A stretch of 64,000 bases of DNA from Haplodiscus bocki (lineage: Eukaryota). The position numbers and the translations under genes were made by a program. This document shows positions 21,601-60,397 of this stretch, one piece after another (position 1 is the first letter of the stretch; each line of letters starts with the position of its first letter). The notes below the pieces were generated by a model. It made no database searches. It saw nothing but the letters and a program-made list of their open reading frames with translations, and was not told where the DNA came from. Where the stretch lies: contig OZ296648.1 of the NCBI GenBank assembly GCA_965655095.1, positions 154,628,001-154,692,000 on the forward strand, written 5' to 3'.

Positions 21601-24554
21601 GGACTTCTGAAAAAGTAGAGCACTGCAACCAAAAACAACGGAGATTGAGAAAAAATTTTTCGATGGGGTTGTCAAAGCTGCATGCTACGTGCTACGTATG
21701 AAGAGGAACACATTAGGAGAAAAATAATTTTCCGGGAAAAGCAAAAAACTTGGATTTTTTTCGAAACTTGAGTGGAAAATATCCAGGTTTTGGACAGGAG
21801 TTTCTCGAGCAAAAAATCTCCAAACTAGAAATCATGTGTCCACGGGAAAAATTTGGCTCAAAAAGTTTTTTCAGAAGACGTCATTTTCTGGGACTATGAC
21901 TGGAAAATTTTCGAAGGTGCTGGGAAAACTTTTCAAGCTTGTCCAATCACCATTCTATGGGTCCATTGGAATATTTTGTATTAAAAAAGGACTTGTTCAC
22001 TCCTAATGGACAAGTTCCTGAGAAAAAAGTCAACCTACTGAGAGATTGATTTTGCTTTCGTAAAACATTCCGACGGAAGAAATTAAGAAAAACATGAGCA
22101 TCTGCTGTGAGTAGTGGAATGAGGATCTATTGAATGTGTGCCCAGGGATTGAAACTGAGCGCAGTACAACAAAAAGTTTGTTGGTAGGTAACTTTGAAAT
22201 TGGACGACTTTCCGAAATTATGGAAAAGAGGAGCTGAAACGAGTACAAATGGACATCAAGTCTAAGAAGTAAATAGGACGGTTTGTTTTCAAATCAGAAT
22301 AAAATGTGTTTTGGGTAGCAAAAGCATGTTTTATGAAACTAGGGTTTTCAAAGAAAGATGTCACTAGGGACGATTTCAAGGTGAACAGAGAAAAAAACAG
22401 ATAACTCGTTTAGCAAAAAAAGGTGCGAGTCAAGCGGAACAAGAGAAAAAACTATAACCAAAGCACTTAAATTGGAAAAAGTACAAAATGAGTCGGTCAA
22501 TGAAGTTCTCGTGATCAATGATTTTGAGGCAGTGGATCCTGGAACGCAAAAAGACTGTGCAGAAGTTCGGTCATCAGTGACTTTTGAACAGAAGTTGAAC
22601 GGAGCTGTCGAGTGCAAAGAGCCCCTGCAGTCATAGGAAAAGCCGTCTCTTGATGAAATACATAGCAGAACTTGGAGACAAACCTCAAAAACAGCAATTG
22701 AAAAAATATATAAGCTAGCAAATTGAAACTTCTTAACTCACTTTTTGAGTCAAGTTAAACATTTTGTTTCTGAACTTCTGTTTTAAAGCGCCTGATTTTG
22801 CCGCAATTGAAAACTAGTAAAATAAAAAGGTTTACCGAATTGGGGGAGTGCCACAGAAAGACTTGAAGAAGATTTTGTATCGTTTTTGTTGCTGCCACAC
22901 ACTCAGTACTATTCCTGAGGTTTTTCCAATTCAGCTTAGTCGAACAAGCGTTGAGATTATTACTTTCATCCAAATTAATTTAATAAAAAACCACCTAACG
23001 AAGAGACAAAAAGTCTTTGCACTCGAAAGCCCTTGTTGTTTTTTTTCCTATGTAATTACAAGTTTTGATAAATTGCACCTCAAGTTTTTCTACATGGAAT
23101 GTTTTTACCTGGATTTCTCGGCTACTTTTCCACTTTGTCATTTTGTGTGCGTTTGGACAAGCACTGGATGGCCACAATACAAGCAGTATTGTTTCAAAGA
23201 AACAACTCCGAGAAGGCCAAAAAAACTACCAGACAAGATATTTTGCGTGGAAAGTACATAACTGGGCTTTACTGCACTTCGGTCACTTCTGCATAATGCC
23301 AGTAACTGAATGGGATCTAGGTGGTCAGAATCCAACAAAAAGATTTCGAAAAAGGGCTTTCAGTGAAAGAAAGCCTGTAAAATTTCAAAAAAATCGAGAC
23401 TACAAGTCCTTAAATTTGGCGTGGAACGTATGTTGCTGAAATTCCAGCATCTCAATTTTCGGAGATTTTGAATGAGCGCCTGATGGCGGCAATCCAATTG
23501 GTGTTTTCTGAAAACTCAAATTGACAAAATACCTGGCCTCCATTTTCCTGTCAATGTTTTGGAAACAACACACTTTTGAACAGGTACATACCGGAAACAG
23601 CAAGTTTTGAATTATTATAGAAGAAATTAAACATAGGCCGGTTGACGATGCACATTCCTGTTTTCTTTCAGATTATGTGAAAAAACTGGAGTTTATGAAC
23701 TCGATTCTCAATGAAGAAAAAATAATTTGATCAATTTCAGCAAATTTTACATTGCGTCAAAGACCTAGATCTTTGAGAGTTACGTCACATTTCAAAATTT
23801 TCAAGAATGGAATTTGAGAGTCAACAATTTTCGGACGCGACGGAAGGTCATTGTGTTGAAAAAGTGAACATGAAAGTACTTTTTCAAAAGACATATCTGA
23901 GAATATTTGAAAGTATCAATTACCAGCTGGAATCAGAAAAGTGAATTACAAAAAGTGGGATCGGACCAGTTTTAAGTGACCGGGATTGAAAAAAACATAA
24001 AAAACTATTGGGCGAATTATTAAGCGTTAAAGATGCTTCAAGAAGCATTTTGACTTGCGCAAATAAATCTCTTTGAAAACTACAAACCAATTGAACGTCC
24101 AAAAATTTGAAACTTTGAAACATTGAATGATCTACTGGTAATTCTTTTATTTTATGGAAAAGTTGCTGTTTTTTGACATTTCAGGAATCAAAAATTTTTG
24201 GACGCAATGTCACCATCTTGAAAAAAGTCCTAGAATAAAATGCGAACAATTGTGACAGTCTGAGGAAACCCAATCTGAGTACTTGCTTATTTAAATCAAC
24301 GCTCCCACCAACACAAGTACTTGGAATCAAAGACAAAACAGTGACGCTCTCTCTAGCTTGGGGGACAAAGGAAAGTAAAAACAGATAAAGTAAACAACAA
24401 ACAGGAACCATTCAGGTTCACTCTAGGAATCAGCTTCGCCCAGTCGGTCAATCGCGGGTCACCTACAAAGAAATTGTAAAACCTATACGCTTTAAAATTG
24501 ATTTATTGCCGAAAAGTTTATTTAAAACATTGTGATTGTTTGGATTTGCAAATA

Positions 24555-25377
24555 GCTAAATTTATATTTTTTTCCGCCTGCTTTTTTGATAATTAAGAAA
24601 AATCATAATTTCTGCGCAGTGCGTTTCTTTTACGTTCCCTTGTCACCATGAACGGAAGACGATTATGAATTCGAAAAATTTTCTAACACAAAATAATAGA
24701 AGATTTGCCGTATAATGCAACTGATTTGGTAGGATTTCCAAATGGGTACGAAAACTGGGATTTTTCGAGAAAAAATTTGTTTTTGAACAAATGCGCTTTT
24801 CATTAAAATCGTGTTTTGCTCTCGTTACTTTCTGTTCCATATTGTAGGTATAGAAAATATTTCAATGGATAGTGCCGTCTTAAGTTTTCAGCATTATTTC
24901 AAATACACTGAAAATGACGTAAAAACGTGGGCGTGAGTTCCACCGTTCGGATTCAAAAGTCACACGCCATAGACGGATCCAATCCTAAACCTGCAGGTAC
25001 AAATGTTGAATCCGTATCAAACAATTGGGTCGGCTACCGCCAGCACATTTTCCGCTTTCCCCTTTTGGTAAAGATGCCTTTAAAGGAATCCAAGCGGTTT
25101 TTTTCAAAACACATTCTTTTGAGTGATGGCCAAAAAACCTCTTAGTTAACGTGAACATCTTCTGAAAAACAATATAATTTGATGTGTTTTCTACAGCAAA
25201 CTTGCTGCCGTCAGTGACTTTGAAGTAAGTCAATTCATTTTCGGAAAAAGCCGATCATTTTTTCAACAGAAAACTCCAATTTTGGAACGGTTGGAGAACT
25301 GTTACATTTTCAGCCGTATTCTACGCCAAATTTGCTATAATTAGTTTATGAGCGATTTTCAATTTCGGAATCGTCTT
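24555..25377. mobile_element. Foldback/MITE-like cassette in monomer 1 (right arm truncated at the monomer junction); representative of the internal monomers
   Basis: The left arm aagacgattatgaattc...tagaagatttgccgtataatgc...aaaactgggattttt is the inverted complement of the right arm aaaactccaattttgg...gtattctacgccaaatttgcta...tttcggaatcgtctt. Confidence 0.75.
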
Positions 25378-27616
25378 AAGAGAACGAGTTCACGGTAAAA
25401 AGAGAAAGGGACAGATATCTTGTTTACCAAGAAACGTGGTGCAGGTCAAGGGGAACAAGACAGAAATACTTTAGGCAACGCACTCAAATGGGGAAAAGTA
25501 CATAAAGAGTCGGTGAATGAAGTTCTCGAGCTCATTGATTTTGAGACAGTGGATCATAGAACCCGAAAAAATGTGCAGAAGTTCTCTCATCAGTGACTTT
25601 GAAGACATTGGACGAAGTTGTCGACCGCAAAGAGCCCCGGGATTTATGGGAAAAGCTGTCTTCCTAGAAAATCGAAAGCGAAAAACGGAGACAACTGTCG
25701 CAATTAGCATTTGAAAAAAACTGATTAGCTAACAACTTGAAACTTGTTAACACTTTTTTGAGTCAAGTTAACCTTTTTGTAAGTAATCTTCCGTTTTAAT
25801 GCGCCTGATTTTGAGGCAAAAAATTACTTCTAAAACAAGTATGTTTTACTGAATTCAGAGAGGGCCACAGATTGATTTGAAATAGATTTGGTATCGCTTA
25901 TGTTGCTGCCAAACACTCAGTACTACTAGTGAAGTTTTTCTGATTAGTTGTTGTCGAACGAGCATTGAGATTAACTTTCTTTCAAACAAATTGATTTAAA
26001 AAAATATCGCTTAACAAAGTGAAAAAAAACCTTTGCACTCGGAAATCCTTGTTGTTTTTTTCTTATAAAACTACAAAATTTGATGAAATATGGTTCAAGT
26101 TAACGTGCAAGGAACGTATTTAGCTGGGTTTCAGGGTTACTCCTCCCTTTTGCTTTTTGTGGGCTTTTGGACAAACACTGGATGGCCACAATACAAACAG
26201 TATTGCTTCAGAAGCACAACTCATTGAAGACAAAAAATATTGGTGTTTGAAATTACAAGACAAAATATTTTGCGTGGAAAGTACATAACGGGACTTTACT
26301 GTCTTTCTATTGATTTTGCAAATTGCGAGCAAGTGCATGGGATCTAGATGGTCAGAATCCAACGAATAATCTTCGAAGAAGTGCTTTCAGTGAAAAAAAT
26401 CAATCAAACTAATACAACTTTGAGACTGGAAATCCAATAACTTGGCTTGGAAGGTATGTGGTTAAAATCCAGCATCTCAATTTTTCAAGAATCGAATTTG
26501 AGAATCAACAATTTTCGAACGCATTAAGATTGCGTAATCTATTGACAAAACTGAGCATATTTGAGAGTATAAATTACCAGTTGGAGCTGAAAAAGTGATT
26601 TGCTGAGAGTGGGTTTGCACTAGTTTCGAGAGAGCGGGGGTAAAAAACAAATAGGAACCAATAGTGGGATTCATTAGGCGCTACGAATGGTTGAAAAACC
26701 AATTGGACTTTCGCAAAATTTTATTGCGTTGGAAACTACAGTACAATCAAACGTTCAAAAATTTGAAACTCCGAAGCAATCAATGGTCTTCTGGTAAACT
26801 TTTTTGTATTTTCAAAAAATTGCAGTTTTTGGACCCGTCCCGAAACAAAAAATTCCGGATGCAATGAGCGTCACCATCTTGGAAAAGGTCGAAGAATAAG
26901 ATGCGAAACATTGTGATAGTTGTGAGAAAACTGAACCTGAGTACTTGCATATTTGAGTCAAATGCTCCCACTACCACAAGTACTTGGAATCTAAGACTAA
27001 ACAGTGATGCTCTCTCTAGCTTGAAGACAAGGGGTAGCAAAAACAGATAAAATAATCGACAAGCAGGTACCATTCTGATTCCCTCAAGCAATCAACCTTG
27101 CCCCATCGGTCAATCAATGGCCCTTTGGGAAGAAAAAGTAAAATCTATATGCAATAAATTTGACTTAATGCAGAAAAGAAATCATCTGAAATATTGTGAT
27201 TGCTTCGATTGGATAAGAACAAAATTTAGAATTTTTTCCGCCTTTTTTTATGATAAGGAAGGAAAATCATCCTTTCAGCGCAGTCCATTGTTTTATATTC
27301 ACCTGCTAGCATGTCCAGAAACCAATTCTGAATTTGAAAAACTTTCTAACACAAAAGAATAGCAAATTTGCCGTAAACCGCAAGTGATTTAGGATTTCTC
27401 AACTGGGTACGAAAACTGGGATTTTTTGAGAACAAAGTTTTTTTTAATGAAATTCCAGTTTTCCTTAAAATTGTACCTTGCTCTCGTTACTTTCTGTCCC
27501 GTAGTGTAAGAAAAGAAAATGTTTCAATGCAAAGTGCCGTTTTAAGTTTTCAGCAAAAATTCAACTTCTCTGAAAATGACATAAGTTTGCGGGCGTGAAT
27601 TTTACCATCCGGAAGC

Positions 27617-27705
27617 AAAATTACACGCCATGGACGGATCGAACCCTAAACTTGCAGGTTAATGTGTTAAAGCCGTATCAAACAAGAGGGTCAGCTACCG
27701 CCGGC
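27617..27705 (-). ncRNA. tRNA-like putative Pol III cassette (monomer 2)
   Basis: Same cassette with intact GGTTCGATCC, TAGCTGA at the A-box position, a possible D-stem GCTG/CGGC, and T4 downstream. Confidence 0.4.
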
Positions 27706-30700
27706 ACTTTTTCCGCCTTCCCATTTTGGTGAAGTTGCCTTTAAAAGATTCCAAACGCTTTTTTTCAAAACACTCTGTTTTGAGTGAGGGCCAATAAACC
27801 TCAGAATTAACGTGAACATTTTTCAAAAAACAATATCGTTTGATATGCTTTTCACAGCAAAATTGCTGCTTCCCGTGATTTTGAAACATATCAAACTATT
27901 TTTCGAAAAATCCGATGTTTTTCAACAAAAAAACCCAATTTCTGCACGGTTTGAGAAATGTTACATTTTCAATCGTAGTCTACGCAAAATTTGCTATAAA
28001 TAATTGAAGAGAGATTCAATTTCTGAATCGTCTTAAGAGAACGATTCCAATGTAAAAAGAGAAAAGCACAGATATTCGTTCACCAATAAACACGGTGCAA
28101 GTCAAGAGGAACAAGAGGAAAATACTTGAAGCAAAGCACTCAAATAGGAAAAAGTACAAAGAGTCGGTGGAAGAATTTCTCGGGGTCCTTGAATTTGAGA
28201 CAGTGGATGCTAGAACGCAAATAAATTGTGCAGAAGTTCTCTCATCAGTGACTTTTGAAGAGATTGGACGAAGTTGTCGAGCGCAAAGAGCCCCTGGAAC
28301 CATAGGAAAAGCTATGTTCTTATAAAATTGAGAGCGAAAAGCGGAGACAACTGTCAAAATTAGCATTTGAAAAAACTGATAAGCTAGCAAAATCAAACTT
28401 GTCAACTCATTTTTTGAGTTAAGTCAAACTTTTTGTGTCTAAACTTCTGTTTCAATGCGCCTGAAATTGGAGCTAAAACACTTCAAAAACAGGTCTGTTT
28501 ACCGAATTCGGGGATAAACACCGACTGATTTGAAATAGATTTGGTATCGCTATTGTTGCTGCCAGACACTCAGTACTTTTACTGAGGTTTTTCCGATTAA
28601 TTCTTGTCGAACGACAATTGAGAACGTTACTTTTTCGTCGAACGAGCATTGAGATTTTTAATCTTGCAAACAAACTGATTTTTAAAATTATCACATAACA
28701 AAGTGACAAAAAACCTTTGCACTCGAAAGTCCTTGTGGCTTTTTTTAAAAAAAACTACACGTTTTGATAAAACACGGCTCAAGTTTATCTGCAAGAAATG
28801 TATTTAGCTGGGTTTCAGAGCTAATCCTACCTGTTGTCTGTTTGTTGGCATCTGGAAAAGCACTGGATGGCCACAATACAACCAGTCTTTTTTTCAGAAG
28901 AACAATATAACAACTCCAAGAAGACGTAAAAGAATGGTTACTGAAATAACAAGACAAAATATTTTGCGTGGAAAGTACATAACGGGACTTCACTGAATTT
29001 ATGTCGGTTCTGCATAATGCGAGCAACTGAATGGGGTTTAGATGGCCAGAAGCCAACGAATATTCTTCGACAAAAGGCTTTTACTGAAAAAAAGCCAGAA
29101 AATCATATACAAAGTTGAGACTACTAGTCCATATATTTGGCGTGGAAAATATGTGACTAAAAATCCAGCATCTTAATTTTTGGGGATTTTGAATGAGCGC
29201 CTGATGGCGGCAATCCAATTGGTGTTTTCTGAAAACTCAAAATGACAAAATACCTGGCCTCCATTTTCCTGTCAATGTTTTGGAAACAACACACTTTTGA
29301 ACAGGAATCAAAATAATTTTGGATGCAATGAGTGGTCACCATCTTGGAAAACAGCCCAAAACAGGATGCGATTAAATGTAACAATTATGAAGAAACTGAA
29401 TCTGAGTACTTCATATTTGAATGGATGCTCCCACCACCAGAAGTACTTGGAATCTGAGATTAAACAGTGATGCTCCCTCTAGCTTGGGGGACAAGGGAGA
29501 GCAAAAACAGATAAAATAAACGACAAGCAGGTACCATTCTGATTCACTCAAGCAATTGGTTTTGCCTTGTCGGTCAATCAAGGGCGGTTTACGAAGAAAA
29601 ATCAAAATCTATATGCATTAAGTTTGACTAAATGCCGAAAAAATTTATCTGAAAAATTGTGATTGTTTCGATTTGAAAAGAGCTAACTTTATATTTTCTT
29701 CCACCTACTTTTATGATAAGGAAGGAGAATTATCCTCTCAGCGCGGTGCGTTTATTTGACGTTCACTTGCCAGCGTTCTACGCCAAATTTGCTGTAGTTA
29801 GTTGCTGAGACTTTTTCAATATGAGGATCGTCTTAAGGGAACGAGTTCAAGGTAAAAAGAGAAGGGGACAGATATCTCATTTACCACGAAAAATAGTGCA
29901 AGTCAAGGGGACCAAGAAAGAAAACCTTGAAGCAAAGCACTCAAACGGATAAAAAATGTTTTTTGAGTCAGTCAATGAAGTTTTGGAGCCCAATAAAATT
30001 GAGACAGTGGATCCCGGAACAAAAACAAGCTGTGAAGTTCTGTCATCAGTGACTTTTGAAGATATTGGACGACAGTGCAAGGAGCCCCTTGAATCACAAA
30101 AAAAGCTGTCTCCTTAAAAAAATTATAAACAAAAATGGAAACAAATGTCAAAACAGCATTTGAAAAAATTGATAAGCTAACAACTTGATACATGTTAACT
30201 CAAATTTTGAGTCAAGTTACACTTTTTTTCTAAACTTCTGTTTCAAAGCGCCTGACTTCATCGCAAAAGATCACACTAGAACAAGTAGGTTTACTGAATT
30301 GAGGGAGTGTCTTAGAGTGAGTTGAAACATACTTTGGTATCGCTTTTGTTGCTGCCAGACACTCAGTACTACCCCCGAAGTTCTTCTAATTCTTTTTTTT
30401 GCCGAACAAGCATTGAGAATATTACTCTTTCAAACAACCTAATCTAAAAAAGTACCAAATAAAAAAGTGACAGAAAACCTTTGCACTCGAAATTCTTTGT
30501 TGTTTGTTTGATTTAACTACAAGTTTTGAAAAAATGCACCTCAAGTTCTCCCGCAGGGAAAGTATTTAGCTGGATTCCTCGGCTACTCCTCCAATTTGCC
30601 AATTTCTGGGCGCTCAGACAAGCACTGGATAGCCACAATACAAACGGTTTTCTGTCAAAAGAACAACTCCGAGAAGACATAAAAGAATGGTTCTTCAAAG

Positions 30701-33700
30701 TACAAGACAAAATATTTTGCGTGGAAAGTACATAACAGGACTTTACTGTCTTTCTGTTGATATTGAAAATTGCGAGGAAGTGAATGGGTTCTAGATGTCA
30801 GACTCTAACGAAGACTCTTCGAAAGAGTGTTTTCAATGAAAAAAACCAGTGAAACTAACAAAAATTTCAGACTAGAAGTCCATAACATTGGCTTGTAAGG
30901 TATGTGACTAAAAAACCAGCATCTCAAATTTCTGGGGTTTCATATAAGTGTCTGATGGTGGCAACTCAATTGATGTTCTTTGAGCATTCAAAATCACAAA
31001 AAATGACCTCCATTTTGCTGCTCAATGTTTACGAAGCTTGCGCAGCAAACAACGCGAATTGAAAAAGTACTTTTCAAAAGCTGCAGGTTTTGGATAGTAT
31101 AAAAGAAATTAGGCATAGGCCGGTTGACGATGCGCAATCCTGTTTTCATTTCAAATCTTCTGGAAAAACTGGAATTTATGCGACCGATTTTCAATGAAAA
31201 AATGATTTAACCGAATTCAGTAATATCAACATTGCGTCAAACGCTCAGAGCGTTGAGAAATACGTGATTTTTCAAACTTTTCAAGAATAGAATTTGAGAG
31301 TCAACAAATTTTGAACGCGACGCAGGGTTATAATTTTGAAAAAGCAAAAATTAGATTGCGCTCTCCAATGACAAAACTGAGCAGATTTGAGAGTTTAAAT
31401 TACCATTTGGAATCGACGAAGCTAATAGCGGAGAGCAAGTTCAGACTAGTTTCGAGGGAGCGGGGTTAATTTGCTATAGGAACCAATAGTGGGATTCATT
31501 AAGCGCTGGGAATGGTTGAAAAACAAATTGGACTTTCGCACAATTTTTTTGCGTTGAAAACTACAAAACTATCAAACGTCCAAATTTTTTGAAACTCCGA
31601 AGCAATCAATGATCTACTGGTAAACTTTTTTGTTTTTTGAAAAAACTGCTGTTTTTGGACCCGTCCCGAAACAAAAACTTCCGGATGCAATGAGCGTCAA
31701 CATCTTGGAAAAAATGGGAGAATAGGACGCGAATAATTGTGACAATTCTGAGTAAACTGAATCGGAGTACCTGCATATTTGAGTCGATGCTCCCACCACC
31801 ACGAGTATTTGGAATCTAAGATTAAACAGTGACGTTCTCTCTAGCTTGGGGGACAAGGGAGAGCAAAAACAGATAAAAGAATTGACAAGCAGGTACCATT
31901 CTGATTCACTCACGCAATCACAAGAAAAAGTTAAATCTACATGCACTAAGTTTGATTTATTGCCGAAAAATTTTTCTGAAATTTTGAGAATGTTTTGATT
32001 TGAAAAGAGCCAACTTTGTATTTCTTTCCGCCTTTTTCTATGATAAGGAAGGAAAATCATCCGGTCAGCGCGGTACATTTCTCTTAAGTTCACTTGCCAG
32101 CATGACCGGAAAACGATTCTGAATTCGAAAAACTTTGAACACAAAATGAGAGAAAATTTGCCGTATAATGCAACTGATTTAGTAGGACTTCTCAAACGGG
32201 TACGAAAACTGGCATTTTTTGACAAAAAATGTTTTTTTTGAAGAAAGCCGATTTTGCTTAAAATTATACTTTGCTCTCGTTACTTTCGGTCCCACATTGT
32301 GAGAATAGAAAATATTTCAAAGGATAGTGCCATTTTAGGTTTTCAGCAAATTTTTAAATTCACTGAAAGTCACGTGAAATTGTGGGCGTGCACTTTACCA
32401 TTCGGATGCAAAAATTACACGCCATAGACGGATCAGAAGCTGAACTTGCAAGTTCAAAAGTTGAAGCCGTATCAAACAAGAGGGTCAGCTACCGCCGGCA
32501 CTTTTTCCGCTTTCCCAATTTGGTAAAGTTGCCTTTAAAAGAATTGAAACGCTTTTTTTTTCAAAACACTGTTGTGAGTGAGGGCCAAAAAACTTCATAA
32601 TTAACGCGAACGTTTTTAATAAAACAATATAAATTGATATGCTTCTACAGAAATTTTGCTGCCTTCAGTGATTTTGAAACTATTCAATTTATTTTTCGGA
32701 AAAACCAATCAATTTTTCAACAGAGAATCCCAATTTTTGTACGGTTGGTGAAATATTACACTTCCATTCGTTCTCTACGGCAAACTTGTTGTAGTTAGTT
32801 GATGAGATTTTTTCAATTTGAGGATCGTCCTAAAAGAACGAGTTTAAGGTAAAAAGAGAAAGGGACAGATAAGTCGTTTACTAAGAAAAATGGTGCAGGT
32901 CAAGGGAAGCAAGAGAGAAATACTAGAAGCAAAGCACTCAAATGGGGAAAAGTACACAGAGAGTCGGTGAATGAACTTTTCGAGCTCAATAAATTTGAGA
33001 CAGTGGATCCCAGAGCCCGAACAAATTTTGCGGAAGTTCTCTCATCAATAAATTTTGAAGAGATCGGACGAAGGTGTCGAGCGCAAAAAGCCCCTGGGTA
33101 CATAGGAAAAGCTGTCTCCTTAAAAAATGGAAAGCGAAAAACGGACACAACTGTCAAAATCAGCAGTTGAAAAAACTGATAAGCTACCAACTTGAAATTT
33201 GTTAACTCATTTTTTAAGTCAAGTTAAAGTTTTTGTTTCTAAACTTCTGGTTTAATGAGCCTGATTTGAGGCAAAAAAAAATACTACTAAAGCAAGTATG
33301 TTTACCGAATTCCAGGATAGCCACCGAGTGATTTCGAATAGATTCGGTATCGCTATTGTTAGTGCCAGACACTCAGTACTATTACTGATGTTTTTCTGAT
33401 TAATTTTTGTCGAACGAGCCTTGACATTATTACTCTTTCAGGCAAACTGATTTTTAAAATCACAAAACAAAGTGAAAAAAAAACCTTTGCACTCAGAAAT
33501 CCTTGTTGTTTTTTTTTCTTATAAAACTACAAAATTTGATAAAATGCGGCTCAAGTTTACCGGAAAGCAAGGTAATTAGCTGGGTTTCACGGCCTCTCCT
33601 CCCTTTTGCCTTTTTGTGGGCTTTTGGACAAACACTGGATGGCCACAATACAAACAGTATCGTTTCAGAAAAACAACTCCGAGAAGACATAAAAGAATGG

Positions 33701-44239: not shown

Positions 44240-44329
44240 AAAAATTACACGCCGTAGACGGATCGAACCCTAAACCTACAGGTTCGAAAGTTGAAGCCGT
44301 ATCCAACGAGAAGGTAGGCTACCGCCGGC
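44240..44329 (-). ncRNA. tRNA-like putative Pol III cassette (monomer 8)
   Basis: Same cassette with intact GGTTCGATCC and a T5 run. Confidence 0.4.
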
Positions 44330-48734: not shown

Positions 48735-51700
48735 GAAAAAAGCCAGAAAAACTAACACAAGTTTGAGACTAGGCGTCCATATAATTAGTTCAGCTGCTAT
48801 AAAACTGAAAATCCAGCATCCCAAGTTTTTGGGATTTTGAATGAGCATCTGATGGCGGCAATCCAGTTTGTTTTTTGAGAACTCAAAATCACAGCACAAT
48901 TGGCCTCCATTTTGCCGCTGAACGTTTAGGAATCTTGCTACCAGCAAACAACGAAAAATTGTACAAGTGCTTGCCAAAAACTGCAAGTTTTGAAAATTAT
49001 AAAAGAAATTAAGTAAAAGCCGGTTGACGAGGCACGTTCCTGTTTTTTCTTCAGATTCTGTGGAAAAACTGGAATTTATGAAACCGGTTCTCAATAAAGA
49101 AAAATGATTTGATGCAATTCAGAACAATTTACATTGCGTCAAACATCTAGAGCCTTGAGAATTAAGTGAAATTTCAAAATATTCAAGGATGGAATATATG
49201 AGTTAACTTTTTTCGGACCCGACGAAGGGTCATCTTTCTGAAAAAGAGAATATTAAGGTGCGTATTCTAATGACAAATCTGAGCACAATTGAGAGTATCA
49301 ATTACTAGTTGGAGTCGAAGAAGTGAATAGCGGAGAGTGAGTTCGGAGTAGCTACGAGCGAGCGGGAGTAGAAAAGACATAGTAACCAATGGTGCGAGTC
49401 ATTAAGCGCTACGGTTAAAAACCAATTGGACTTTCGAAAAATGACTTTGCGTTGAAAATTGCCAACTAATGAAACGTCCAATTTTTTTGATATTTCGCAG
49501 CATTCAATGGTTTACTCGTTTACGAAGTTTTGGAAAAAATTCAGTTCTTGGACCCTTCAGGAATCAACTTTTTTTGGACGCAATGAGTGGTCACCATCTT
49601 GGAAAACAGCCGAAAATAGGATGCGATTAAATGTGATCGTGAAGAAACTGAATCTGAATACTTGCATATTTGAACCGAAGCTCGCACCACCACAAGTAAT
49701 TGGAATCTACGACTAAACAGTGACGCTCTTTCTAGCTTGGGGGACAAAGGAAAGTAAAAACAGATGAAGTAAACAACAAGGAGGTGCCATTCAGGTTCAC
49801 TCTAGCAATCAGCTTTGCCCAGTCCGTCAATCACGGGTCGTTCGCAAAGAAAAAGTAAAATCTATACGCTTTAAGTTTAACTGATTGCCGAAGAAAATTC
49901 ATTTGAAAGATTGTGATTGTTTCGATTTGAAAATAGCTAAATTGATAATTTCCGCTAACATTTTTGATAAAGGAAGAAAATCATCATTTCTCCGCGATGC
50001 GTTTCTTTCACGTTCCCTTGCAAGCATGGCCGGAAGACGATTCTGAATTGGAGTGTTTGACACCAATTGATAGCAAATTTGCCGTATAATGCGATTGAAT
50101 TAGTAAGATTTCTCAAATGGGCATAAACTTGGGGTTTTTCTCAAAATCGTACTTTAATCTTGAAACTTTTTGTCCCATACTGTAAAATTAGAAAAAATTT
50201 CAACGGATGGTGCCGTTTTAAATTTTCAGGCAATTTGCCAATTCACTGAAAGTGACGTTAATTTGAAAGAGTGAAATTTACCTTTCGGATGCAAAAATTA
50301 CACGCCATAGAGGGAGCGAACCCTCAACCTGCAGGTTAATATGTTGCAGCCTTATCAAGCAAGAGAGTCGGCTACCTCCGGCACATTTTCCTCTTCCCCA
50401 TTTTGGTAAAGATGCCTCTAAAAGAATGCAAGCGGTCTTTTTCCAAAACACTTTCCTTTGCGTGAGGGCTAAAAAACCTCACAATTAACGTGAACATTTG
50501 TTGAAAAAGTACAATTTGATATGCGTTCTACAGCAAACCTGCTGCCATCAGTGACTTTAAAACAAGTCAATGTGTTTATCGAAAAATCCCATCTATTTTT
50601 TCAACAGAAAACCCCAAATTTCTAAGGTTTGGAGAAATCCTACAATTTCAGTCCTATTCTACGCCAAATTTGCTTGATTTTGTTTTTGAGAAGTTTTCAA
50701 ATTCAGACTGGACTTAGTTGGACAATTTCAAGGTAAAAAGAAAAGGACAGATACCTCATTTATCAAAAAAAATGGTGCAGGTCAAGGGGGAACAAGAGAG
50801 AAATGTTTGAAGCAAAGCACTCAAATGGGGAAAAGTACAAAGAGTCGTTTCAAGAACTTTTCCGAGCTCGTTGAATTTGAGACAGTGGGTCCCAGAACCC
50901 GAACAAATAGTGCGGAGTTCTGCCACCAGTAACTTTTGAAAAGAGATTGGACGAAGTTGTCGAGCGCAAAGAGCCCCTGGAACCATAGGAAAAGCTACCT
51001 TCTTATAAAATTGAGAGCGAAAAGCGGAGACAACTGTCAAAATTAGCATTTGAAAAAACTGATAATCTAGCAAAATGAAACTTGTCAACTCATTTTTTGA
51101 GTCAAGTTAAACTTTTTGTGTCTGAACTTCTGTTTCAATGCGCCTGAAATTGGAGCTAAAACACTTCAAAAACAGGTCTGTTTACCGAATTCGGGGATAA
51201 ACACCGACTGATTTGAAATAGATTTGGTATCGCTATTGTTGCTGCCAGACACTCAGTACTTTTACTGAGGTTTTTCCGATTAATTCTTGTCGAACGACAA
51301 TTGAGAACGTTACTTTTTCGTCGAACGAGCATTGAGATTTTTAATCTTGCAAACAAACTGATTTTTAAAATTATCACATAACAAAGTGACAAAAAACCTA
51401 TGCTCTCGAAAGTCCTTGAGGCTTTTTTTAAAAAAAAACTACAAGTTTTGATAAAACGCGGCTCAAGTTTACCTGCAAGGAATGAATTTAGCTGGGTTTC
51501 AGAGCTAGTCCTACCTTTTGTCTTTTCTTTGGCATTTGGAAAAGCACTGGATGGCCACAATACAACCAGTTTTTTTTTCAGAAGAACAACATAACAACTC
51601 CAAGGAGACATAAAAGAATGGTTACTGAAATAACAAGACAAAATATTTTGCGTGGAAAGTACATAACGGGACTTCACTGAATTTCTGTCGGTTCTGCATA

Positions 51701-54700
51701 ATGCGAGCAACTGAATGGGGTCTAGATGGCCAGAAGCCAACGAATATTCTTCGACAAAACGCTTTTACTGAAAAAAAGCCAGAAAATCATATACAAAGTT
51801 GAGACTACTAGTCCATATATTTGGCGTGGAAATTATGTGACTGAAAATCCAGCATCTTAATTTTTGGGGATTTCGAATGAGCGCCTGATGACGGCAATCC
51901 AATTTGTTTTTTTTCTGGGAACTCAATCACAAATTAATTAGCCTTAATTTTGCTGCTCAATGTTGAGGAAGCTTGCGCAGCAAACAACGGAAAATTGAAC
52001 AAGTACTTGCCAAAAACTGCAAGTTTTGAAAATTATAAAAGAAATTAAGCAAAAGCCGGTTGATCATCCACATTCCCGTTTTCTTTCAGACTATGTGAAA
52101 AAACAGGAGGTTGTGAACTCGATTCTCAATGAAAATGATTTGATCGAAATCGCCAATATTCACATTGCGTCAAACACTCAGAGCGTTGAAAATTACGTGA
52201 CATTTCAAAATTTTCAAGAAAGGAAATTGAGAGTCGACAAATTTCGGACGCGACAAAGGGTCATCTTTTTCAAAAAGCGAACATTCAGGTGCGTATTCGA
52301 ATGACAAATTTAAGCGTATTTGAGAGTATCAGTTACCAGTTGGAGTCGAAAAAGTGAAAAGCGAAGAGTGGGTTCGGACTAGTTTTGAGTGAGCGGGAGA
52401 GAAAAACATAGAAACCAATGGTGCGAGTCGATAAGCGCTAAGAATGGTTAAAAAACCAATTGCAATTACGCAAAAGGATATTGCGTTGAAAACTACAAAC
52501 TAATCAAACGTCCAGGAATTCGAAATTTCGACGCATTCATTGGTCTACTGGTAAATTCTCTTGTTTTAAAAAAGTTGCAGTTTTTAGACCCTTCAGGAAT
52601 CAATTTTTTTTGGACGCAATGTGTAGTCACAATCTTAGAAAAAAGCCGAAAGTAAGATGCGAATCATAGTGACAGTTCTGAGAAGACTGTATCTCAGTAG
52701 TTGCATATTCGAATCGAAGCTCCTACTACAACAAGTTCCTGGAATCGGAGACTAAACGGTGACGCCCTCTCTATCTTGAGGGACGAGGGAAAGTAAAAAC
52801 AGATGAAGTAAACAACAAGGAGGTGTCATTCAGGTTCACTCTAGCAATCAGCTTTGCCCAGTCCGTCAATCACGAGCCGTTTGCTAAGAAAAAGTAAAAT
52901 CTATACCTCTGAAGTTTGACTGATTGCCGAATAAAAGTCATTTGATACATTGTGATTGTTTCGACTTGATAATAGCTAGAACTACATTCTCCGTTTACCT
53001 TTTTGATATGGAAAATCATCAATTCTGCGCGATGCGTTTCTTTTACGTTTCCTTGTCAGCATGGCCGGCAGGCGATTCTGAATTGAAAATCAAAACAATT
53101 TATAACAAATTTGACGTATAATACGACCAATTTATTTAGTAGGGTTTTTCAAGTGGGTACGAAAAATGTGGTTTCTCAAAAAAGGATCTCGTTTTTTTTT
53201 CAAAAAATCCGATTTTTCTCAAAATCGCACTTTAATATTGTTACTTTTTGTTCCATACTGTAAAATTAGAATTTAATTTAAGGGCTGGTACCGTTTTGAA
53301 TTTTTAGGAAATTTGCCAACTCTCTGAGAGTGACGTAAATATACGGGCGTAAAAATTACCTTTCGGATGCAAAAATTACACGCCATGGACGTACCGAACC
53401 CTCAATTTTCAGGCTCATATGTTGAAGCCTTATCTTGCAAGAGGATCGGCCACTGCTTGGAAGTTTTTCGTATTCCCATTTTGGATTCTCCCATTCTCAT
53501 TATGTCTTCAAATGAATCCAAGCGTTTTTTTCGAAACACTCTTTTGAGTGATGGCCAAAAAACCTCTGAGTTAACGTGAACATCTTTTGAAAAACAATAT
53601 AATTTGATGTGCTTTCTACAGCAAACTTGCTGCCGTCAATGACTTTGAAGTAAGTCAATTTATTTTCGGAAAAAGCCGATCATTTTTTCAACAGAAAACT
53701 CCAATTTTGGAACGGTTGGAGAACTGTTACATTTTCAGCCGTATTCTACGCCAAATTTGCTATAATTAGTTTATGAGCGATTTTCAATTTCGGAATCGTC
53801 TTAAGAGAACGAGTTCACGGTAAAAAGAGAAAGGGACAGATATCTCGTTTACCAAGAAACGTGGTGCAGGTCAAAGGGAACAAGACAGAAATACTTTAAG
53901 CAACGCACTCAAATGGGGAAAAGTACATGAAGAGTCGGTGAATGAAGTTCTGGAGCTCATTGATTTTGAGACAGTGGATCATAGAACCCGAAAAAATGTG
54001 CAGAAGTTCTCTCATCAGTCACTTTGAAGACATTGGACGAAGTTGTCGACCGCAAAGAGCCCCTGAAATCATCGGAAAAGCTGTCTTCCTAAAAAATCGA
54101 AAGCGAAAAACGGAGACAACTGTCGCAATTAGCTTTTGAAAAAAAACTGATTAGCTAGCAACTTGAAACTTGTTAACTCATTTTCTGAGTCAAGTTAAAC
54201 TTTTTGTTTGTAAACTTCCATTTCAATGCGCCTGATTTTGAGGCAAAAAATTACTTCTAAAACAAGTATGTTTTACTGAATTCAGAGAGGGCCACAGATT
54301 GATTTGAAATAGATTTGGTATCGCTTATGTTGCTGCCAAACACTCAGTACTACTAGTGAAGTTTTTCTGATTAGTTGTTGTCGAACGAGCATTGAGATTA
54401 ACTTTCTTTCAAACAAATTGATTTAAAAAAATATCGTCTAACAAAGTGAAAAAAAACCTTTGCACTCGGAAATCCTTGTTGTTTTTTTCTTATAAAACTA
54501 CAAAATTTGATGAAATAAGGCTCAAGTTAACGTGCAAGGAAAGTATTCAGCTGGGTTTCACGGCTATTCCTCCCTTTTGTTTTGTCGGGGCTTTTGGACA
54601 AGCAGTGGATCCCCACAAAACAAGCAGTAAGGTTTCAGGAACACAACTTCTAGAAGACATAAAAGAATGATTTTTGAAATTACAATAAAAGATAGTTTGC

Positions 54701-57700
54701 GTGGGAAGTGCATAACGGGACGTTACTGCCTTTCTGTTGATTTTGCAAATTGCGAACAATTGGCTGAGATCTAGATGGTCAGAACCCAACGAATAATCTT
54801 CGAAAATTGCTCCCAGTGAAAAAAGCCAGAAAAACTAACACAAGTTTGAGACTAGGCGTCCATATAAATAGTTCAGCTGCTATAAAACTGAAAATCCAGC
54901 ATCCCAAGTTTTTGGGATTTTGAATGAGCGTCTGATGGCAGCAATCCAGTTTGTGTTTTTTGAGAACTCGAAATCACAGCACAATTGGCCTCCATTTTGC
55001 CGCTGAACGTTTAGGAATCTTGCTACCAGCAAACAACGAAAAATTGAACAAGTGCTTGCCAAAAACTGCAAGTTTTGAAAATTATAAAAGAAATTAAGGA
55101 AAAGCCGGTTGGCGAGGCACGTTCCTGTTTTTTCTTCAGATTCTGTGGAAAAACTGGAATTTATGAAACCGGTTCTCAATGAAGAAAAACGATTTGATGC
55201 AATTCAGAACAATTTACATTGCGTCAAACATCTAGAGCCTTGAGAATTAAGTGAAATTTCAAAATATTCAAGGATGGAATATATGAGTTAACTTTTTTCG
55301 GACCCGACGAAGGGTCATCTTTCTGAAAAAGAGAATATTAAGGTGCGTATTCTAATGACAAATCTGAGCACAATTGAGAGTATCAATTACTAGTTGGAGT
55401 CGAAGAAGTGAATAGCGGAGAGTGAGTTCGGAGTAGCTACGAGCGAGCGGGAGTAGAAAAGACATAGTAACCAATGGTGCGAGTCATTAAGCGCTACGGT
55501 TAAAAACCAATTGGACTTTCGAAAAATGACTTCGCGTTGAAAATTGCCAACTAATGAAACGTCCAATTTTTTTGATATTTCGCAGCATTCAATGGTTTAC
55601 TCGTTTACGAAGTTTTGGAAAAAATTCAGTTCTTGGACCCTTCAGGAATCAACTTTTTTTGGACGCAATGAGTGGTCACCATCTTGGAAAACAGCCGAAA
55701 ATAGGATGCGATTAAATGTGATCGTGAAGAAACTGAATCTGAATACTTGCATATTTGAACCGAAGCTCGCACCACCACAAGTAATTGGAATCTACGACTA
55801 AACAGTGACGCTCTTTCTAGCTTGGGGGACAAAGGAAAGTAAAAACAGATGAAGTAAACACCAAGGAGGTGCCATTCAGGTTCACTCTAGCAATCAGCTT
55901 TGCCCAGTCCGTCAATCACGGGTCGTTCGCAAAGAAAAAGTAAAATCTATACGCTTTAAGTTTAACTGATTGCCGAAGAAAATTCATTTGAAAGATTGTG
56001 ATTGTTTCGATTTAAAAATAGCTAAATTGATAATTTCCGCTAACATTTTTGATAAAGGAAGAAAATCATCATTTCTCCGCGATGCGTTTCTTTCACGTTC
56101 CCTTGCAAGCATGGCCGGAAGACGATTCTGAATTGGAGTGTTTGACACCAATTGATAGCAAATTTGCCGTATAATGCGATTGAATTAGTAAGATTTCTCA
56201 AATGGGCATAAACTTGGGGTTTTTCTCAAAATCGTACTTTAATCTTGAAACTTTTTGTCCCATACTGTAAAATTAGAAAAAATTTCAACGGATGGTGCCG
56301 TTTTAAATTTTCAGGCAATTTGCCAATTCACTGAAAGTGACGTTAATTTGAAAGAGTGAAATTTACCTTTCGGATGCAAAAATTACACGCCATAGAGGGA
56401 GCGAACCCTCAACCTGCAGGTTAATATGTTGCAGCCTTATCAAGCAAGAGAGTCGGCTACCTCCGGCACATTTTCCTCTTCCCCATTTTGGTAAAGATGC
56501 CTCTAAAAGAATGCAAGCGGTCTTTTTCCAAAACACTTTCCTTTGCGTGAGGGCTAAAAAACCTCACAATTAACGTGAACATTTGTTGAAAAAGTACAAT
56601 TTGATATGCGTTCTACAGCAAACCTGCTGCCATCAGTGACTTTAAAACAAGTCAATGTGTTTATCGAAAAATCCCATCTATTTTTTCAACAGAAAACCCC
56701 AAATTTCTAAGGTTTGGAGAAATCCTACAATTTCAGTCCTATTCTACGCCAAATTTGCTTGATTTTGTTTTTGAGAAGTTTTCAAATTCAGACTGGACTT
56801 AGTTGGACAATTTCAAGGTAAAAAGAAAAGGACAGATACCTCATTTATCAAAAAAAATGGTGCAGGTCAAGGGGGAACAAGAGAGAAATGTTTGAAGCAA
56901 AGCACTCAAATGGGGAAAAGTACAAAGAGTCGTTTCAAGAACTTTTCCGAGCTCGTTGAATTTGAGACAGTGGGTCCCAGAACCCGAACAAATAGTGCGG
57001 AGTTCTGCCACCAGTAACTTTTGAAAAGAGATTGGACGAAGTTGTCGAGCGCAAAGAGCCCCTGGAACCATAGGAAAAGCTACCTTCTTATAAAATTGAG
57101 AGCGAAAAGCGGAGACAACTGTCAAAATTAGCATTTGAAAAAACTGATAATCTAGCAAAATGAAACTTGTCAACTCATTTTTTGAGTCAAGTTAAACTTT
57201 TTGTGTCTGAACTTCTGTTTCAATGCGCCTGAAATTGGAGCTAAAACACTTCAAAAACAGGTCTGTTTACCGAATTCGGGGATAAACACCGACTGATTTG
57301 AAATAGATTTGGTATCGCTATTGTTGCTGCCAGACACTCAGTACTTTTACTGAGGTTTTTCCGATTAATTCTTGTCGAACGACAATTGAGAACGTTACTT
57401 TTTCGTCGAACGAGCATTGAGATTTTTAATCTTGCAAACAAACTGATTTTTAAAATTATCACATAACAAAGTGACAAAAAACCTATGCTCTCGAAAGTCC
57501 TTGAGGCTTTTTTTAAAAAAAAACTACAAGTTTTGATAAAACGCGGCTCAAGTTTACCTGCAAGGAATGAATTTAGCTGGGTTTCAGAGCTAGTCCTACC
57601 TTTTGTCTTTTCTTTGGCATTTGGAAAAGCACTGGATGGCCACAATACAACCAGTTTTTTTTTCAGAAGAACAACATAACAACTCCAAGGAGACATAAAA

Positions 57701-58877
57701 GAATGGTTACTGAAATAACAAGACAAAATATTTTGCGTGGAAAGTACATAACGGGACTTCACTGAATTTCTGTCGGTTCTGCATAATGCGAGCAACTGAA
57801 TGGGGTCTAGATGGCCAGAAGCCAACGAATATTCTTCGACAAAACGCTTTTACTGAAAAAAAGCCAGAAAATCATATACAAAGTTGAGACTACTAGTCCA
57901 TATATTTGGCGTGGAAATTATGTGACTGAAAATCCAGCATCTTAATTTTTGGGGATTTCGAATGAGCGCCTGATGACGGCAATCCAATTTGTTTTTTTTC
58001 TGGGAACTCAATCACAAATTAATTAGCCTTAATTTTGCTGCTCAATGTTGAGGAAGCTTGCGCAGCAAACAACGGAAAATTGAACAAGTACTTGCCAAAA
58101 ACTGCAAGTTTTGAAAATTATAAAAGAAATTAAGCAAAAGCCGGTTGATCATCCACATTCCCGTTTTCTTTCAGACTATGTGAAAAAACAGGAGGTTGTG
58201 AACTCGATTCTCAATGAAAATGATTTGATCGAAATCGCCAATATTCACATTGCGTCAAACACTCAGAGCGTTGAAAATTACGTGACATTTCAAAATTTTC
58301 AAGAAAGGAAATTGAGAGTCGACAAATTTCGGACGCGACAAAGGGTCATCTTTTTCAAAAAGCGAACATTCAGGTGCGTATTCGAATGACAAATTTAAGC
58401 GTATTTGAGAGTATCAGTTACCAGTTGGAGTCGAAAAAGTGAAAAGCGAAGAGTGGGTTCGGACTAGTTTTGAGTGAGCGGGAGAGAAAAACATAGAAAC
58501 CAATGGTGCGAGTCGATAAGCGCTAAGAATGGTTAAAAAACCAATTGCAATTACGCAAAAGGATATTGCGTTGAAAACTACAAACTAATCAAACGTCCAG
58601 GAATTCGAAATTTCGACGCATTCATTGGTCTACTGGTAAATTTTCTTGTTTTAAAAAGTTGCAGTTTTTAGACCCTTCAGGAATCAATTTTTTTTTGGAC
58701 GCAATGTGTAGTCACAATCTTAGAAAAAAGCCGAAAGTAAGATGCGAATCATAGTGACAGTTCTGAGGAGACTGTATCTCAGTAGTTGCATATTCGAATC
58801 GAAGCTCCTACTACAAGTTCCTGGAATCGGAGACTAAACGGTGACGCTCTCTCTATCTTGAGGGACGAGGGAAAGTA
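48735..58877 (+). repeat. Higher-order (dimer) duplication, period 6,085 bp
   Basis: Identical ORF translations at offset 6085: 49459/55544, 49541/55626, 50756/56841, 51156/57241, 51400/57485 and 52026/58111. Confidence 0.95.
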
Positions 58878-59040
58878 GAAAAAAGAGTAAAGTAAACAAC
58901 AAGCAGGTACCATTTAGGTTCACTCTAACAATAAACCTTGCCCAGTCGGTCAATCACAGGCCGTTGGCGAAGAGAATGTAAGTTCTATATTGCCGACTAA
59001 AATTTATTTGAAACCTTGTGATTGTTTCCATTTGAAAATA

Positions 59041-59958
59041 GCTAAATTTATATTATATTCCGCCTATATTTATGATAAGGAAAGAAAATTATCCTTTCAG
59101 CGCGGTGCGTTTGTTTCACGTTCACTTGCCGGCACGGCCGGAAGACAATTCTGAATTTCAAATTTTTTCAACACAAAATTGAAGTAAGTTTGCCCTATAA
59201 TTCGCCTCAAATAGTAGGATTTCTCAAATGGGTACGAAAGTTGGGGTTTTCCAAAAAAAAGTTGGGTGTTGCTTGAAAAAATCCTATTTTTTTTTCAAAA
59301 TCGTACTTTGCTCTTGTTACTTCGTCCGAAATTGCAAAAGTAGAAAATAATTTATTGCATAAAGCCGTTTTACTTTTTCAGGAAATTTTGCGAATTATCT
59401 AAAAGTGACTTGAAATTGCGGGCGTGAATTTTACCTTTCGGATGCAAAAATTACACGCCATAGACGGATCGAACCCTCAAACTGCAGGTTAATATGTTGC
59501 AGCCTTATCAAGCAAGAGGGTCGGCTACCGCCGGCACATTTTCCGCTTTCCCATTTTGGTAAAGATGCCTTTAAAAGAATCCAAGCGCTTTTTTTTCAAA
59601 ACATTATTTTTTGAGTGAGGGCCAAAAAACCTCACAATTAACGTGAACGTTTTTTCAAAAAACAATATAACTTGATATGCTTTCTACAGCAAATTTGCTA
59701 CCTTCAGTGATTTTGAAACAATTCATTTTTCAAAGAATCTCATTTTTTTTCAACAGAAAACCCCAATTTTTGAACGTTTTGAGAAATCTTAATTTGTCGT
59801 ATTCTACGGCAAATTTGCTATCAAATTTGTAATGTCCTGGTCAGAACCAGAGACAAGTGTCAATTGGCAAGTGAGCGTGAAAAAACGTCGGATTTGATCG
59901 TTTTGAGTGAATTATTTTCCTTCCAAATTGTAAATATGCCCGGAAAATATCAATTGTA
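59041..59958. mobile_element. Complete ~920-bp foldback/MITE-like element with ~200-bp imperfect TIRs, ending the array
   Basis: The right arm ...ttctacggcaaatttgcta...tggcaagtgagcgtgaaaaaacg...attttccttcc...ccggaaaatatcaatt is inverted to the left-arm consensus gctaaattkata..ttccgcc...ggaaggaaaatcatcc...cgtttttttacgttcacttgcca...tagcaaatttgccgta. Confidence 0.75.
59446..59535 (-). ncRNA. tRNA-like or SINE-head-like putative Pol III cassette (monomer 13)
   Basis: Minus strand: GCCGGCGG TAGCCGA ccctcttgcttgata AGGC tgcaac atattaa cctgc agttt gag GGTTCGATCC gtctatGGCG tgtaa TTTTT. This gives an A-box-like motif, a B-box and a T5 terminator. The T-stem and acceptor stem are imperfect. Confidence 0.45.
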
Positions 59959-60257: not shown

Positions 60258-60397
60258 CCCAAGGATGACACAGGGCATTCTTAGTAAGACAGAGATGGGG
60301 TACAGGGGAACCAGGGATGACTTAGTACGGTCCCAGGGATGCACCCATGGGGTCTACTAAGTTATCCCTGGGACTGTAGTAAGTTATCTATGGGCCC
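60258..60397. repeat. GC-rich cluster of a ~17-bp motif in direct and inverted orientation
   Basis: ccagggatgacttagta (60311) pairs with tactaagttatccctgg (60355-60371; 1 mismatch). Further partial copies at 60258, 60332 and 60378. Confidence 0.6.

What the first reader, a model, noticed from the sequence alone, without database searches (positions are those of the whole stretch)
22345..59958. 37.6-kb array of a ~3-kb composite unit (anonymous body plus foldback element)
Seen: 13 tandem monomers, visibly diverged from each other (roughly one base in five by eye), each made of ~2.2 kb of anonymous sequence plus an inverted-repeat cassette. Established: kb-scale macrosatellites can arise from transposon-containing units. 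Inference: this is a TE-seeded macrosatellite or a tandemly replicated non-autonomous element. I do not recognise the family.
Basis: partly seen in the sequence, partly recalled or inferred. Interest (0 to 1): 0.7.

Follow-up and report, generated by a model that had tools for sequence, protein, structure and literature searches.

The report
Old 13-copy 3-kb tandem DNA array
A 3-kb stretch of ordinary non-coding animal DNA, which already held a few small dead transposons, was copied head to tail 13 times in place and has since decayed; it is a real but ordinary macrosatellite-like array with no sign of a gene or a function.

Summary
Window ~22344-59819 is a head-to-tail array of 13 units of about 3.06 kb: ten full, two sharing one ~400-bp deletion, one truncated. 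Units are typically 75-80% identical (median K2P 0.24).

The unit is not a mobile element. Its ~1.2-kb body and the ~220-bp centre of the "foldback" occur nowhere else in the 1.5-Gb genome. The foldback is two inverted copies, one partial, of a high-copy ~420-445-bp MITE-like repeat. The unit junction cuts through the right copy, and only the last unit runs on for 130 bp into the flank to complete it. The transposons are therefore passengers, or at most the site of a breakpoint, in an in-place tandem duplication.

Conservation along the unit is flat. There are no Pfam, Rfam or tRNA hits, the ORFs are broken in sister units, and the B-box-like motif is decayed. This looks like neutral DNA.

The array still exchanges sequence. 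One ~5-kb tract, spanning most of two adjacent units, is present twice and is near-identical over about 3.6 kb. Many 96-99% identical patches link non-adjacent units.

Earlier follow-ups of this scan report several other kb-unit, transposon-containing arrays in the same genome, so this is a further, unusually diverged, example of a known kind.

The parts
22344..59819 (+). Whole tandem array: 13 units of ~3.06 kb. The left end is uncertain by about 20 bp.
22368..25318 (+). M01, full unit. Its last ~500 bp are 99% identical to the tail of M07.
25319..27978 (+). M02, with a ~400-bp deletion after 26482 that has the same breakpoints as in M07. It is a mosaic: head ~99% like M10, middle and tail ~99% like M07 and M06.
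27979..29775 (+). M03, truncated unit. Reference positions ~1315-1937 are missing, and so is the whole inverted-repeat cassette apart from its first ~90 bp.
29776..32773 (+). M04, full unit
32774..35812 (+). M05, full unit
35813..38883 (+). M06, full unit
38884..41534 (+). M07, with the same ~400-bp deletion (after 40045) as M02
41535..44602 (+). M08, full unit. It carries a private 24-bp tandem duplication at 44044-44091.
44603..47660 (+). M09, full unit
47661..50656 (+). M10, full unit, 98% identical to M12
50657..53743 (+). M11, the unit used as reference. Its first ~2.1 kb are 99.6% identical to M13.
53744..56741 (+). M12, full unit
56742..59819 (+). M13, the last unit. It is the only one whose right inverted arm continues into the flank.
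48100..52794 (+). Copy A of the recently exchanged or duplicated tract. It is near-identical (0.99-1.00 in every 100-bp bin) at ~48900-52500 to the sequence 6085 bp downstream.
54185..58876 (+). Copy B of the same tract. Short-read contigs here have about twice the depth of contigs in the unique M13 tail.
59054..59949 (.). The only complete inverted-repeat ('foldback') structure. Left arm 59054-59303, centre 59304-~59504, right MITE-like copy ~59505-59949. The last 130 bp lie outside the array.
59304..59504 (.). Centre of the cassette. It is found only in the 12 array copies, nowhere else in the genome, and it holds the decayed B-box-like motif at ~59464-59477 on the minus strand.
52441..52946 (.). 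A dispersed ~450-bp interspersed repeat inside the unit (coordinates in M11). Many copies on other chromosomes are 66-75% identical to it.
51947..52371 (.). Short pieces of further dispersed repeats inside the unit (M11 reference positions 1291-1450 and 1465-1715)
50717..51946 (.). Locus-specific 'anonymous body' (coordinates in M11). It has no other copy in the 1.5-Gb genome.

Best explanation
This is an old, single-locus, non-coding tandem array (macrosatellite-like) made by in-place tandem duplication of an ordinary ~3.06-kb stretch of DNA. Before the first duplication, that stretch already held ~1.2 kb of unique sequence, a ~450-bp interspersed repeat, smaller repeat pieces, and two inverted copies of a high-copy MITE-like repeat. 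The first duplication joined a point inside the right MITE copy (window 59819) to a point ~3.06 kb upstream (~22344). I infer that a replication or repair error did this, possibly helped by the hairpin-prone inverted repeat and a short microhomology. I also infer that unequal sister-chromatid or homologue exchange then raised the copy number to 13. What is shown: the units then diverged neutrally to 20-25%; two units share a deletion and one lost its cassette; and sporadic exchange between units (gene conversion or unequal crossing-over) continues, most recently over most of a two-unit block. The array most likely has no function.
For: - Array and unit boundaries.
- The body and the cassette centre are unique to this locus. 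In one search all 17 candidates were scored: 13 lie in the array and 4 are ~70-bp scraps. In one search there are 12 matches, all in the array.
- About 40% of the unit matches dispersed repeats.
- Dispersed copies of the arm repeat align to 59505-59949, which runs 130 bp beyond the array end, so the junction cuts the repeat and only the last copy is whole.
- Conservation is flat along the unit, ~0.8 in every 60-column bin. The best 20-column windows reach 0.95 against a mean of 0.82 and sd of 0.076.
- No Rfam family or tRNA was found, and none of the 16 array ORFs tested passes a Pfam threshold.
- The two longest ORFs tested match only other units, at 37-57% amino-acid identity in most units (82-92% in M03) with one to nine stops in nearly every match, as expected for neutral DNA at ~78% nucleotide identity.
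- Exchange patches of 96-99% identity sit on a 75-80% background, and one ~5-kb tract is present twice.
- Short-read contigs from two samples bridge a unit junction and the array end.
Against: - No long reads were available, so the copy number and the reality of the identical duplicated tract rest on the assembly plus a rough twofold contig depth.
- No RNA run holds the stretch, so transcription, for example as a piRNA or lncRNA source, is untested.
- The microhomology at the breakpoints is only suggestive after 20% decay.
- Short exons or a very old degraded gene in the body cannot be excluded by ORF-wise Pfam scans.
- Dfam and Repbase were not available.
Confidence: 0.8

Rival explanations
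1. The unit is itself a non-autonomous transposon that multiplied in tandem, by rolling-circle read-through (Helitron-like) or by repeated insertion into itself, as in the double-insertion route to satellites.
For: The unit contains inverted repeats and transposon pieces. Tandem transposon dimers and a ~16-copy hobo array are documented in Drosophila (PMC5932611).
Against: The body and the cassette centre have no copy outside the array. The junction lies inside the right arm, 130 bp short of its terminus, and the last copy runs on uninterrupted into the flank. The junction sequence shows no Helitron-type ends.
Confidence: 0.05
2. The array is a tandem cluster of genes or pseudogenes, either protein-coding with short exons or a Pol III / small-RNA gene in each cassette.
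For: Long ORFs of up to 203 aa lie on the minus strand of several units. A B-box-like GGTTCGATCC sits on the minus strand at ~59464-59477.
Against: The ORFs lie at different unit positions, are interrupted by stops in sister units and have no Pfam match. The minus strand is pyrimidine-rich across the whole window, which by itself lengthens chance ORFs. ARAGORN found nothing and Rfam gave no tRNA match even at E up to 10. The B-box-like motif is mutated in most units. Conservation is flat.
Confidence: 0.05
3. The array is a functional non-coding macrosatellite, such as a chromatin boundary, a TFIIIC/insulator array or a piRNA cluster, kept by selection on copy number rather than on sequence.
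For: Human DXZ4 and D4Z4 show that ~3-kb arrays can act on chromatin (my background knowledge; D4Z4 is mentioned in PMC5932611). The array has persisted long enough to diverge by 24%.
Against: No motif or segment stands out from neutral decay. No RNA holders were found, though that is weak evidence. Earlier notes of this scan, which I did not check, say many similar arrays in this genome look functionless.
Confidence: 0.07
4. All or part of the array is an assembly artefact.
For: A ~3.6-kb stretch is present twice with near-perfect identity (0.99-1.00 in every 100-bp bin), 6085 bp apart, a pattern that mis-assembly can create. No long-read check was possible.
Against: Twelve of the thirteen units differ from one another by 7-25%, which assembly errors cannot produce. 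Independent short-read contigs from two samples bridge the M12/M13 junction, the end of the identical tract and the array end, and contigs in the identical tract have about twice the depth of the unique M13 tail in runs X1 and X3.
Confidence: 0.03

Closest known systems
Macrosatellites (kb-unit tandem arrays such as human D4Z4, 3.3 kb, and DXZ4, 3 kb)
   Same: The unit is about 3 kb, arranged head to tail at a single locus, and is a composite that includes older interspersed repeats.
   Different: Units here are only 75-80% alike, against near-identical units in the human arrays (my background knowledge). No gene (D4Z4 carries DUX4) and no conserved protein-binding motif was found. Copy-number polymorphism is untested.
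Satellite DNAs born from transposons (reviews PMC12628747, PMC9659126 and PMC6947457; Tetris foldback of Drosophila virilis, PMC4079207; MITE-derived arrays in Xenopus)
   Same: Transposon sequence, including an inverted-repeat structure, is part of the repeated unit. The array's growth by unequal exchange, and its birth by microhomology-mediated repair, are both among the mechanisms listed in PMC12628747.
   Different: In those cases the repeated unit is the transposon itself or an internal piece of it. Here more than half of the unit is unique DNA, the MITE-like copy is cut by the junction, and nothing points to transposition in the array's birth.
Tandem transposon dimers and arrays by double insertion (McGurk and Barbash 2018, PMC5932611)
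   Same: A moderate copy number of the same order as the ~16-copy hobo array described there.
   Different: That route gives junctions at element termini. Here the junction is internal to the repeat and the unit is not a transposon.
Other kb-unit arrays reported by this scan in the same genome (s1-366627 hAT, s1-376443 MULE, s1-369379 LINE tail, s1-385923 gypsy piece, s1-376587)
   Same: The genome is the same, as is the pattern of one segment (a transposon piece plus neighbouring DNA) amplified in place into tens of kb.
   Different: Judging only from those notes' short summaries, their units are mostly transposon sequence. Here the transposon share is about 40% and copy number is lower. I did not compare divergence.

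Membership tests
Macrosatellite / kb-unit tandem array | Unit of at least 1 kb repeated head to tail | tested here: met
   13 units of 2.65-3.09 kb, plus one of 1.8 kb
Macrosatellite / kb-unit tandem array | Confined to one or a few loci | tested here: met
   The body matches only C1:154.650-154.688 Mb in the 1.5-Gb genome
Macrosatellite / kb-unit tandem array | Units kept alike by concerted evolution | tested here: not met
   Typical identity is 75-80%. Only patches, and one ~5-kb tract spanning most of two units, are at least 96% alike.
Macrosatellite / kb-unit tandem array | Copy number varies between individuals | not testable with these tools
   Only short-read contigs from two samples were available
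Transposon-derived satellite | The unit is a transposon or a piece of one | tested here: not met
   About 40% of the unit matches dispersed repeats. The 1.2-kb body and the cassette centre are unique.
Tandem transposon multimer (double insertion or rolling circle) | Junctions fall at element termini | tested here: not met
   The junction is 130 bp inside the right arm, and the last copy continues into the flank
Foldback / long-TIR MITE | Long terminal inverted repeats | tested here: met
   Arms 59054-59303 and ~59700-59949, with segments 71-90% complementary
Foldback / long-TIR MITE | The whole structure is dispersed as one mobile unit | tested here: not met
   Dispersed copies are single ~420-445-bp elements without a second arm. 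The centre is found only in the array.
Foldback / long-TIR MITE | Target-site duplication | tested here: inconclusive
   A TA on both sides is possible at 59054/59949, but it is not distinguishable from chance in AT-rich DNA
tRNA gene or tRNA-derived SINE | tRNA-like fold with A and B boxes | tested here: not met
   ARAGORN found none. Rfam gave no tRNA match at E up to 10. The B-box-like motif is mutated in most units.
Tandem protein-coding gene cluster | A reading frame conserved across units | tested here: not met
   Stops in sister units, 37-57% amino-acid identity in most units, no Pfam hit, flat conservation

The most novel reading that the evidence does not exclude
The hairpin-prone inverted MITE pair is not a mere passenger. 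It would be the recurrent trigger of fork stalling and template switching at this locus. More broadly, this genome (an acoel, according to earlier notes I did not check) would have an unusually active in-place amplification process that turns arbitrary 1-3-kb segments next to inverted repeats into arrays. This array would then be an old, decayed product that still undergoes exchange.
Probability: 0.12. Interest if true: 0.5.

Novelty: new member of a known kind. Interest (0 to 1): 0.2.

Why it matters
On its own it matters little: it is one more non-coding kb-unit array. It is useful as a clean, datable example. One breakpoint can be read to within a few bases, because the last unit completes a repeat that every inner junction truncates. 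That shows the array was born by local duplication and not by transposition.

Its mix of deep divergence (24%) with 99-100% identical patches records how slowly and patchily exchange acts on a small interstitial array. Together with the other arrays noted in this genome, it could feed a genome-wide study of how such arrays arise and decay in this lineage.

Tried and rejected
- TRF finds nothing at this scale, because its longest period is 500.
- Rfam at gathering thresholds over the whole window, and at E up to 10 over the cassette, gave only noise. ARAGORN found no tRNA.
- Pfam scans of 16 array ORFs and 12 flank ORFs gave only sub-threshold noise. This includes the DAD (E 0.017), GtgE and DUF4495 hits.
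- Own-genome protein searches with two array ORFs hit only sister units, with stops.
- I looked for a remnant of the arm repeat in the left flank, which would have pointed to unequal crossing-over between two direct copies. No similarity was found beyond the array start.
- I looked for a Helitron-type end at the junction and found none.
- I looked for monomer-specific transposon insertions and found none longer than 24 bp.
- The sequencing-run search returned four coded runs of one study and no RNA run. Their contigs are 250-800 bp, so they could not test copy number.
- I did not use the large protein searches, the structure tools or the Atlas, because no ORF showed any sign of being real.
- Dfam and Repbase are not among the tools.
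- I built no consensus of the unit; all searches used natural copies by reference.
Full report
**Observation**

A self-comparison of the window and a comparison of one unit (50657-53743) with the window show 13 head-to-tail units between 22368 and about 59820. Ten are 2.95-3.09 kb. M02 (25319-27978) and M07 (38884-41534) are 2.65 kb and lack the same ~400 bp, with identical breakpoints. M03 (27979-29775) is a 1.8-kb remnant.

- Pairwise identity is mostly 75-85%, with a median K2P distance of 0.24 and a transition/transversion ratio near 1.
- Tandem Repeats Finder reports nothing only because its longest period is 500.
- The window has one gap of 162 N at 3956-4117, far from the array.

**Ends of the array**

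Local alignment of the flanks with inner junctions places the right end at 59819. The left end is at about 22344, and weak similarity may reach ~22326. The true unit is therefore about 3060 bp, for example 56760-59819.

**Content of the unit**

Searches of the window's own 1.5-Gb genome split the unit into two kinds of sequence.

- **Unique parts.** The first ~1.2 kb of the body matches only the 13 array copies. In one search all 17 candidates were scored: 13 were array copies and 4 were ~70-bp scraps. The ~220-bp centre of the inverted-repeat cassette matches only 12 array copies.
- **Dispersed repeats.** These parts match many copies on other chromosomes at 66-80% identity:
  - reference positions 1291-1450 and 1465-1715, which are short pieces;
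  - positions 1785-2290, a ~450-bp element;
  - the two arms of the cassette (with 3987 first-look candidates).

The very high short-read word depth over 59401-59800 and 56001-56200 agrees with a high-copy family.

**The 'foldback'**

Inverted arms are real: 59054-59303 pairs with ~59700-59949, with segments 71-90% complementary. However, sixteen dispersed copies fetched with 1-kb flanks are single elements of about 420-445 bp. They correspond to 59505-59949, carry only an ~11-bp subterminal inverted repeat (TATTTTCCGCC / GGCGGAAAATA), and have no second arm. The left arm of the cassette is an inverted partial copy of the same family.

The cassette is therefore two inverted copies of a MITE-like repeat around unique DNA, not one mobile foldback. 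A TA on both sides is compatible with a target-site duplication but proves nothing in this AT-rich DNA.

**The key anatomical point**

Six dispersed copies align to the window up to 59947-59949, which is 130 bp beyond the array end. The twelve inner junctions stop at the position equivalent to 59819 and switch to the start of the body.

The array is thus in phase with its right flank, which is what in-place tandem duplication predicts. A multimer of a mobile element, or re-integration of an amplified circle, would not give this. A short imperfect match (CAAA..GC.AT) at both breakpoints may be a microhomology, but after 20% decay this cannot be shown.

**No sign of a gene or other function**

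- Conservation among 11 non-redundant units is flat, at 0.72-0.88 in every 60-column bin. The best 20-column windows (0.95) lie within two standard deviations of the mean of 0.82.
- No Rfam family reaches its threshold over the window. No tRNA was found. No tRNA or other credible match appears in the cassette at E up to 10.
- The B-box-like GGTTCGATCC on the minus strand at ~59464-59477 is mutated in most units. In addition, only one half of the proposed tRNA-like stretch belongs to the dispersed repeat. The 'Pol III cassette' note (s1-369416) is not supported.
- Sixteen array ORFs give no Pfam hit above threshold.
- The two ORFs tested against the genome match only sister units, at 37-57% amino-acid identity in most units (82-92% in M03) with one to nine stops in nearly every match. 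That is what neutral DNA at ~78% nucleotide identity gives.
- The long minus-strand ORFs are explained by the purine excess of the plus strand across the whole window.

**Dynamics**

The array is a mosaic.

- At an offset of 6085 bp, 48100-52794 equals 54185-58876. Every 100-bp bin from ~48900 to ~52500 scores 0.99-1.00. This makes M10 about 98% identical to M12, and makes the first 2.1 kb of M11 match M13 at 99.6%.
- Many other 150-1000-bp patches of 96-99% identity link non-adjacent units. Examples are the tails of M01 and M07, the head of M02 with M10, M02 with M07, and M06 with M07. They sit on a 75-80% background in which most units are unique in most segments.
- This is the signature of occasional gene conversion or unequal exchange without overall homogenisation.
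- No unit has acquired an insertion longer than 24 bp.

**Independent support**

Four coded runs from one study and two samples hold 78-87% of the sampled words; none is on record as RNA.

- Their contigs, 250-800 bp long, bridge the M12/M13 junction (56421-56904), the end of the identical tract (58105-58847) and the array end (59764-60000).
- In runs X1 and X3, contigs within the identical tract have about twice the depth of the unique M13 tail. This is weak evidence that the tract is truly present twice.
- Copy number could not be checked with long reads.

**Comparison with known kinds**

The closest kinds are macrosatellites and satellites born from transposons (PMC12628747; PMC5932611; PMC4079207, PMC9659126 and PMC6947457).

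- It works like the duplication-plus-unequal-exchange route described there.
- It fails the defining features of a transposon-derived satellite: the unit is not a transposon, and the junction is not at a terminus.
- It lacks the homogeneity of classical macrosatellites.

Earlier follow-ups of this scan describe several kb-unit arrays in the same genome, which one note calls an acoel flatworm. I did not test those. They suggest that this genome is rich in such arrays.

**Verdict**

The array is a real feature and an ordinary kind: an old, decaying, single-locus tandem duplication array with passenger transposon pieces. Confidence is about 0.8 and interest is low.

Noticed in passing
window 59446-59535: The neighbouring note's 'tRNA-like Pol III cassette' is not supported. 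ARAGORN and Rfam do not see a tRNA, the B-box-like motif on the minus strand (~59464-59477) is mutated in most units, and only ~59505-59535 belongs to the dispersed repeat while the rest is array-specific.
   Followed up: yes
window 427-1386 (+) and 4334-4986 (-): By eye these ORFs look like remnants of a non-LTR retrotransposon, with a motif typical of the C-terminal part of a LINE reverse transcriptase. Pfam gives no hit above threshold. A 162-N gap at 3956-4117 sits between them.
   Followed up: partly
window 17842-18486 (-): This 214-aa ATG ORF is the longest in the window. It has no Pfam hit and is single-copy in the genome, with one weak, stop-ridden match on C2. It is rich in F, L and S, and is probably a chance ORF on the pyrimidine-rich strand.
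   Followed up: partly
window 1-64000: The plus strand is richer in both G and A across nearly the whole window, flanks included; the cumulative GC skew rises steadily to 1.73. This may reflect a long transcription unit or replication asymmetry. The cause was not determined.
   Followed up: no
window 60311-60371: A 61-bp imperfect palindrome, 81% self-complementary, lies just right of the array.
   Followed up: no
window 44044-44091: A perfect 2-copy tandem duplication of 24 bp, private to M08, inside the left arm region of its cassette.
   Followed up: no
L029-L044 (dispersed copies, e.g. L031:1001-1444): The arm repeat is a high-copy family (about 4000 first-look candidates) of ~420-445 bp. 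It has a constant left end (AACAAGACGGCCGGCTACC...), an 11-bp subterminal inverted repeat and no poly-A tail. Its class was not determined: MITE-like, not a typical SINE.
   Followed up: partly
window 15793-15880 vs 34088-34175 (inverted); 17434-17493 vs 33379-33433 and 36459-36497: Short, weak similarities (72-85%, 40-88 bp) link the left flank and the unit body. They are probably scraps of shared old repeats.
   Followed up: no
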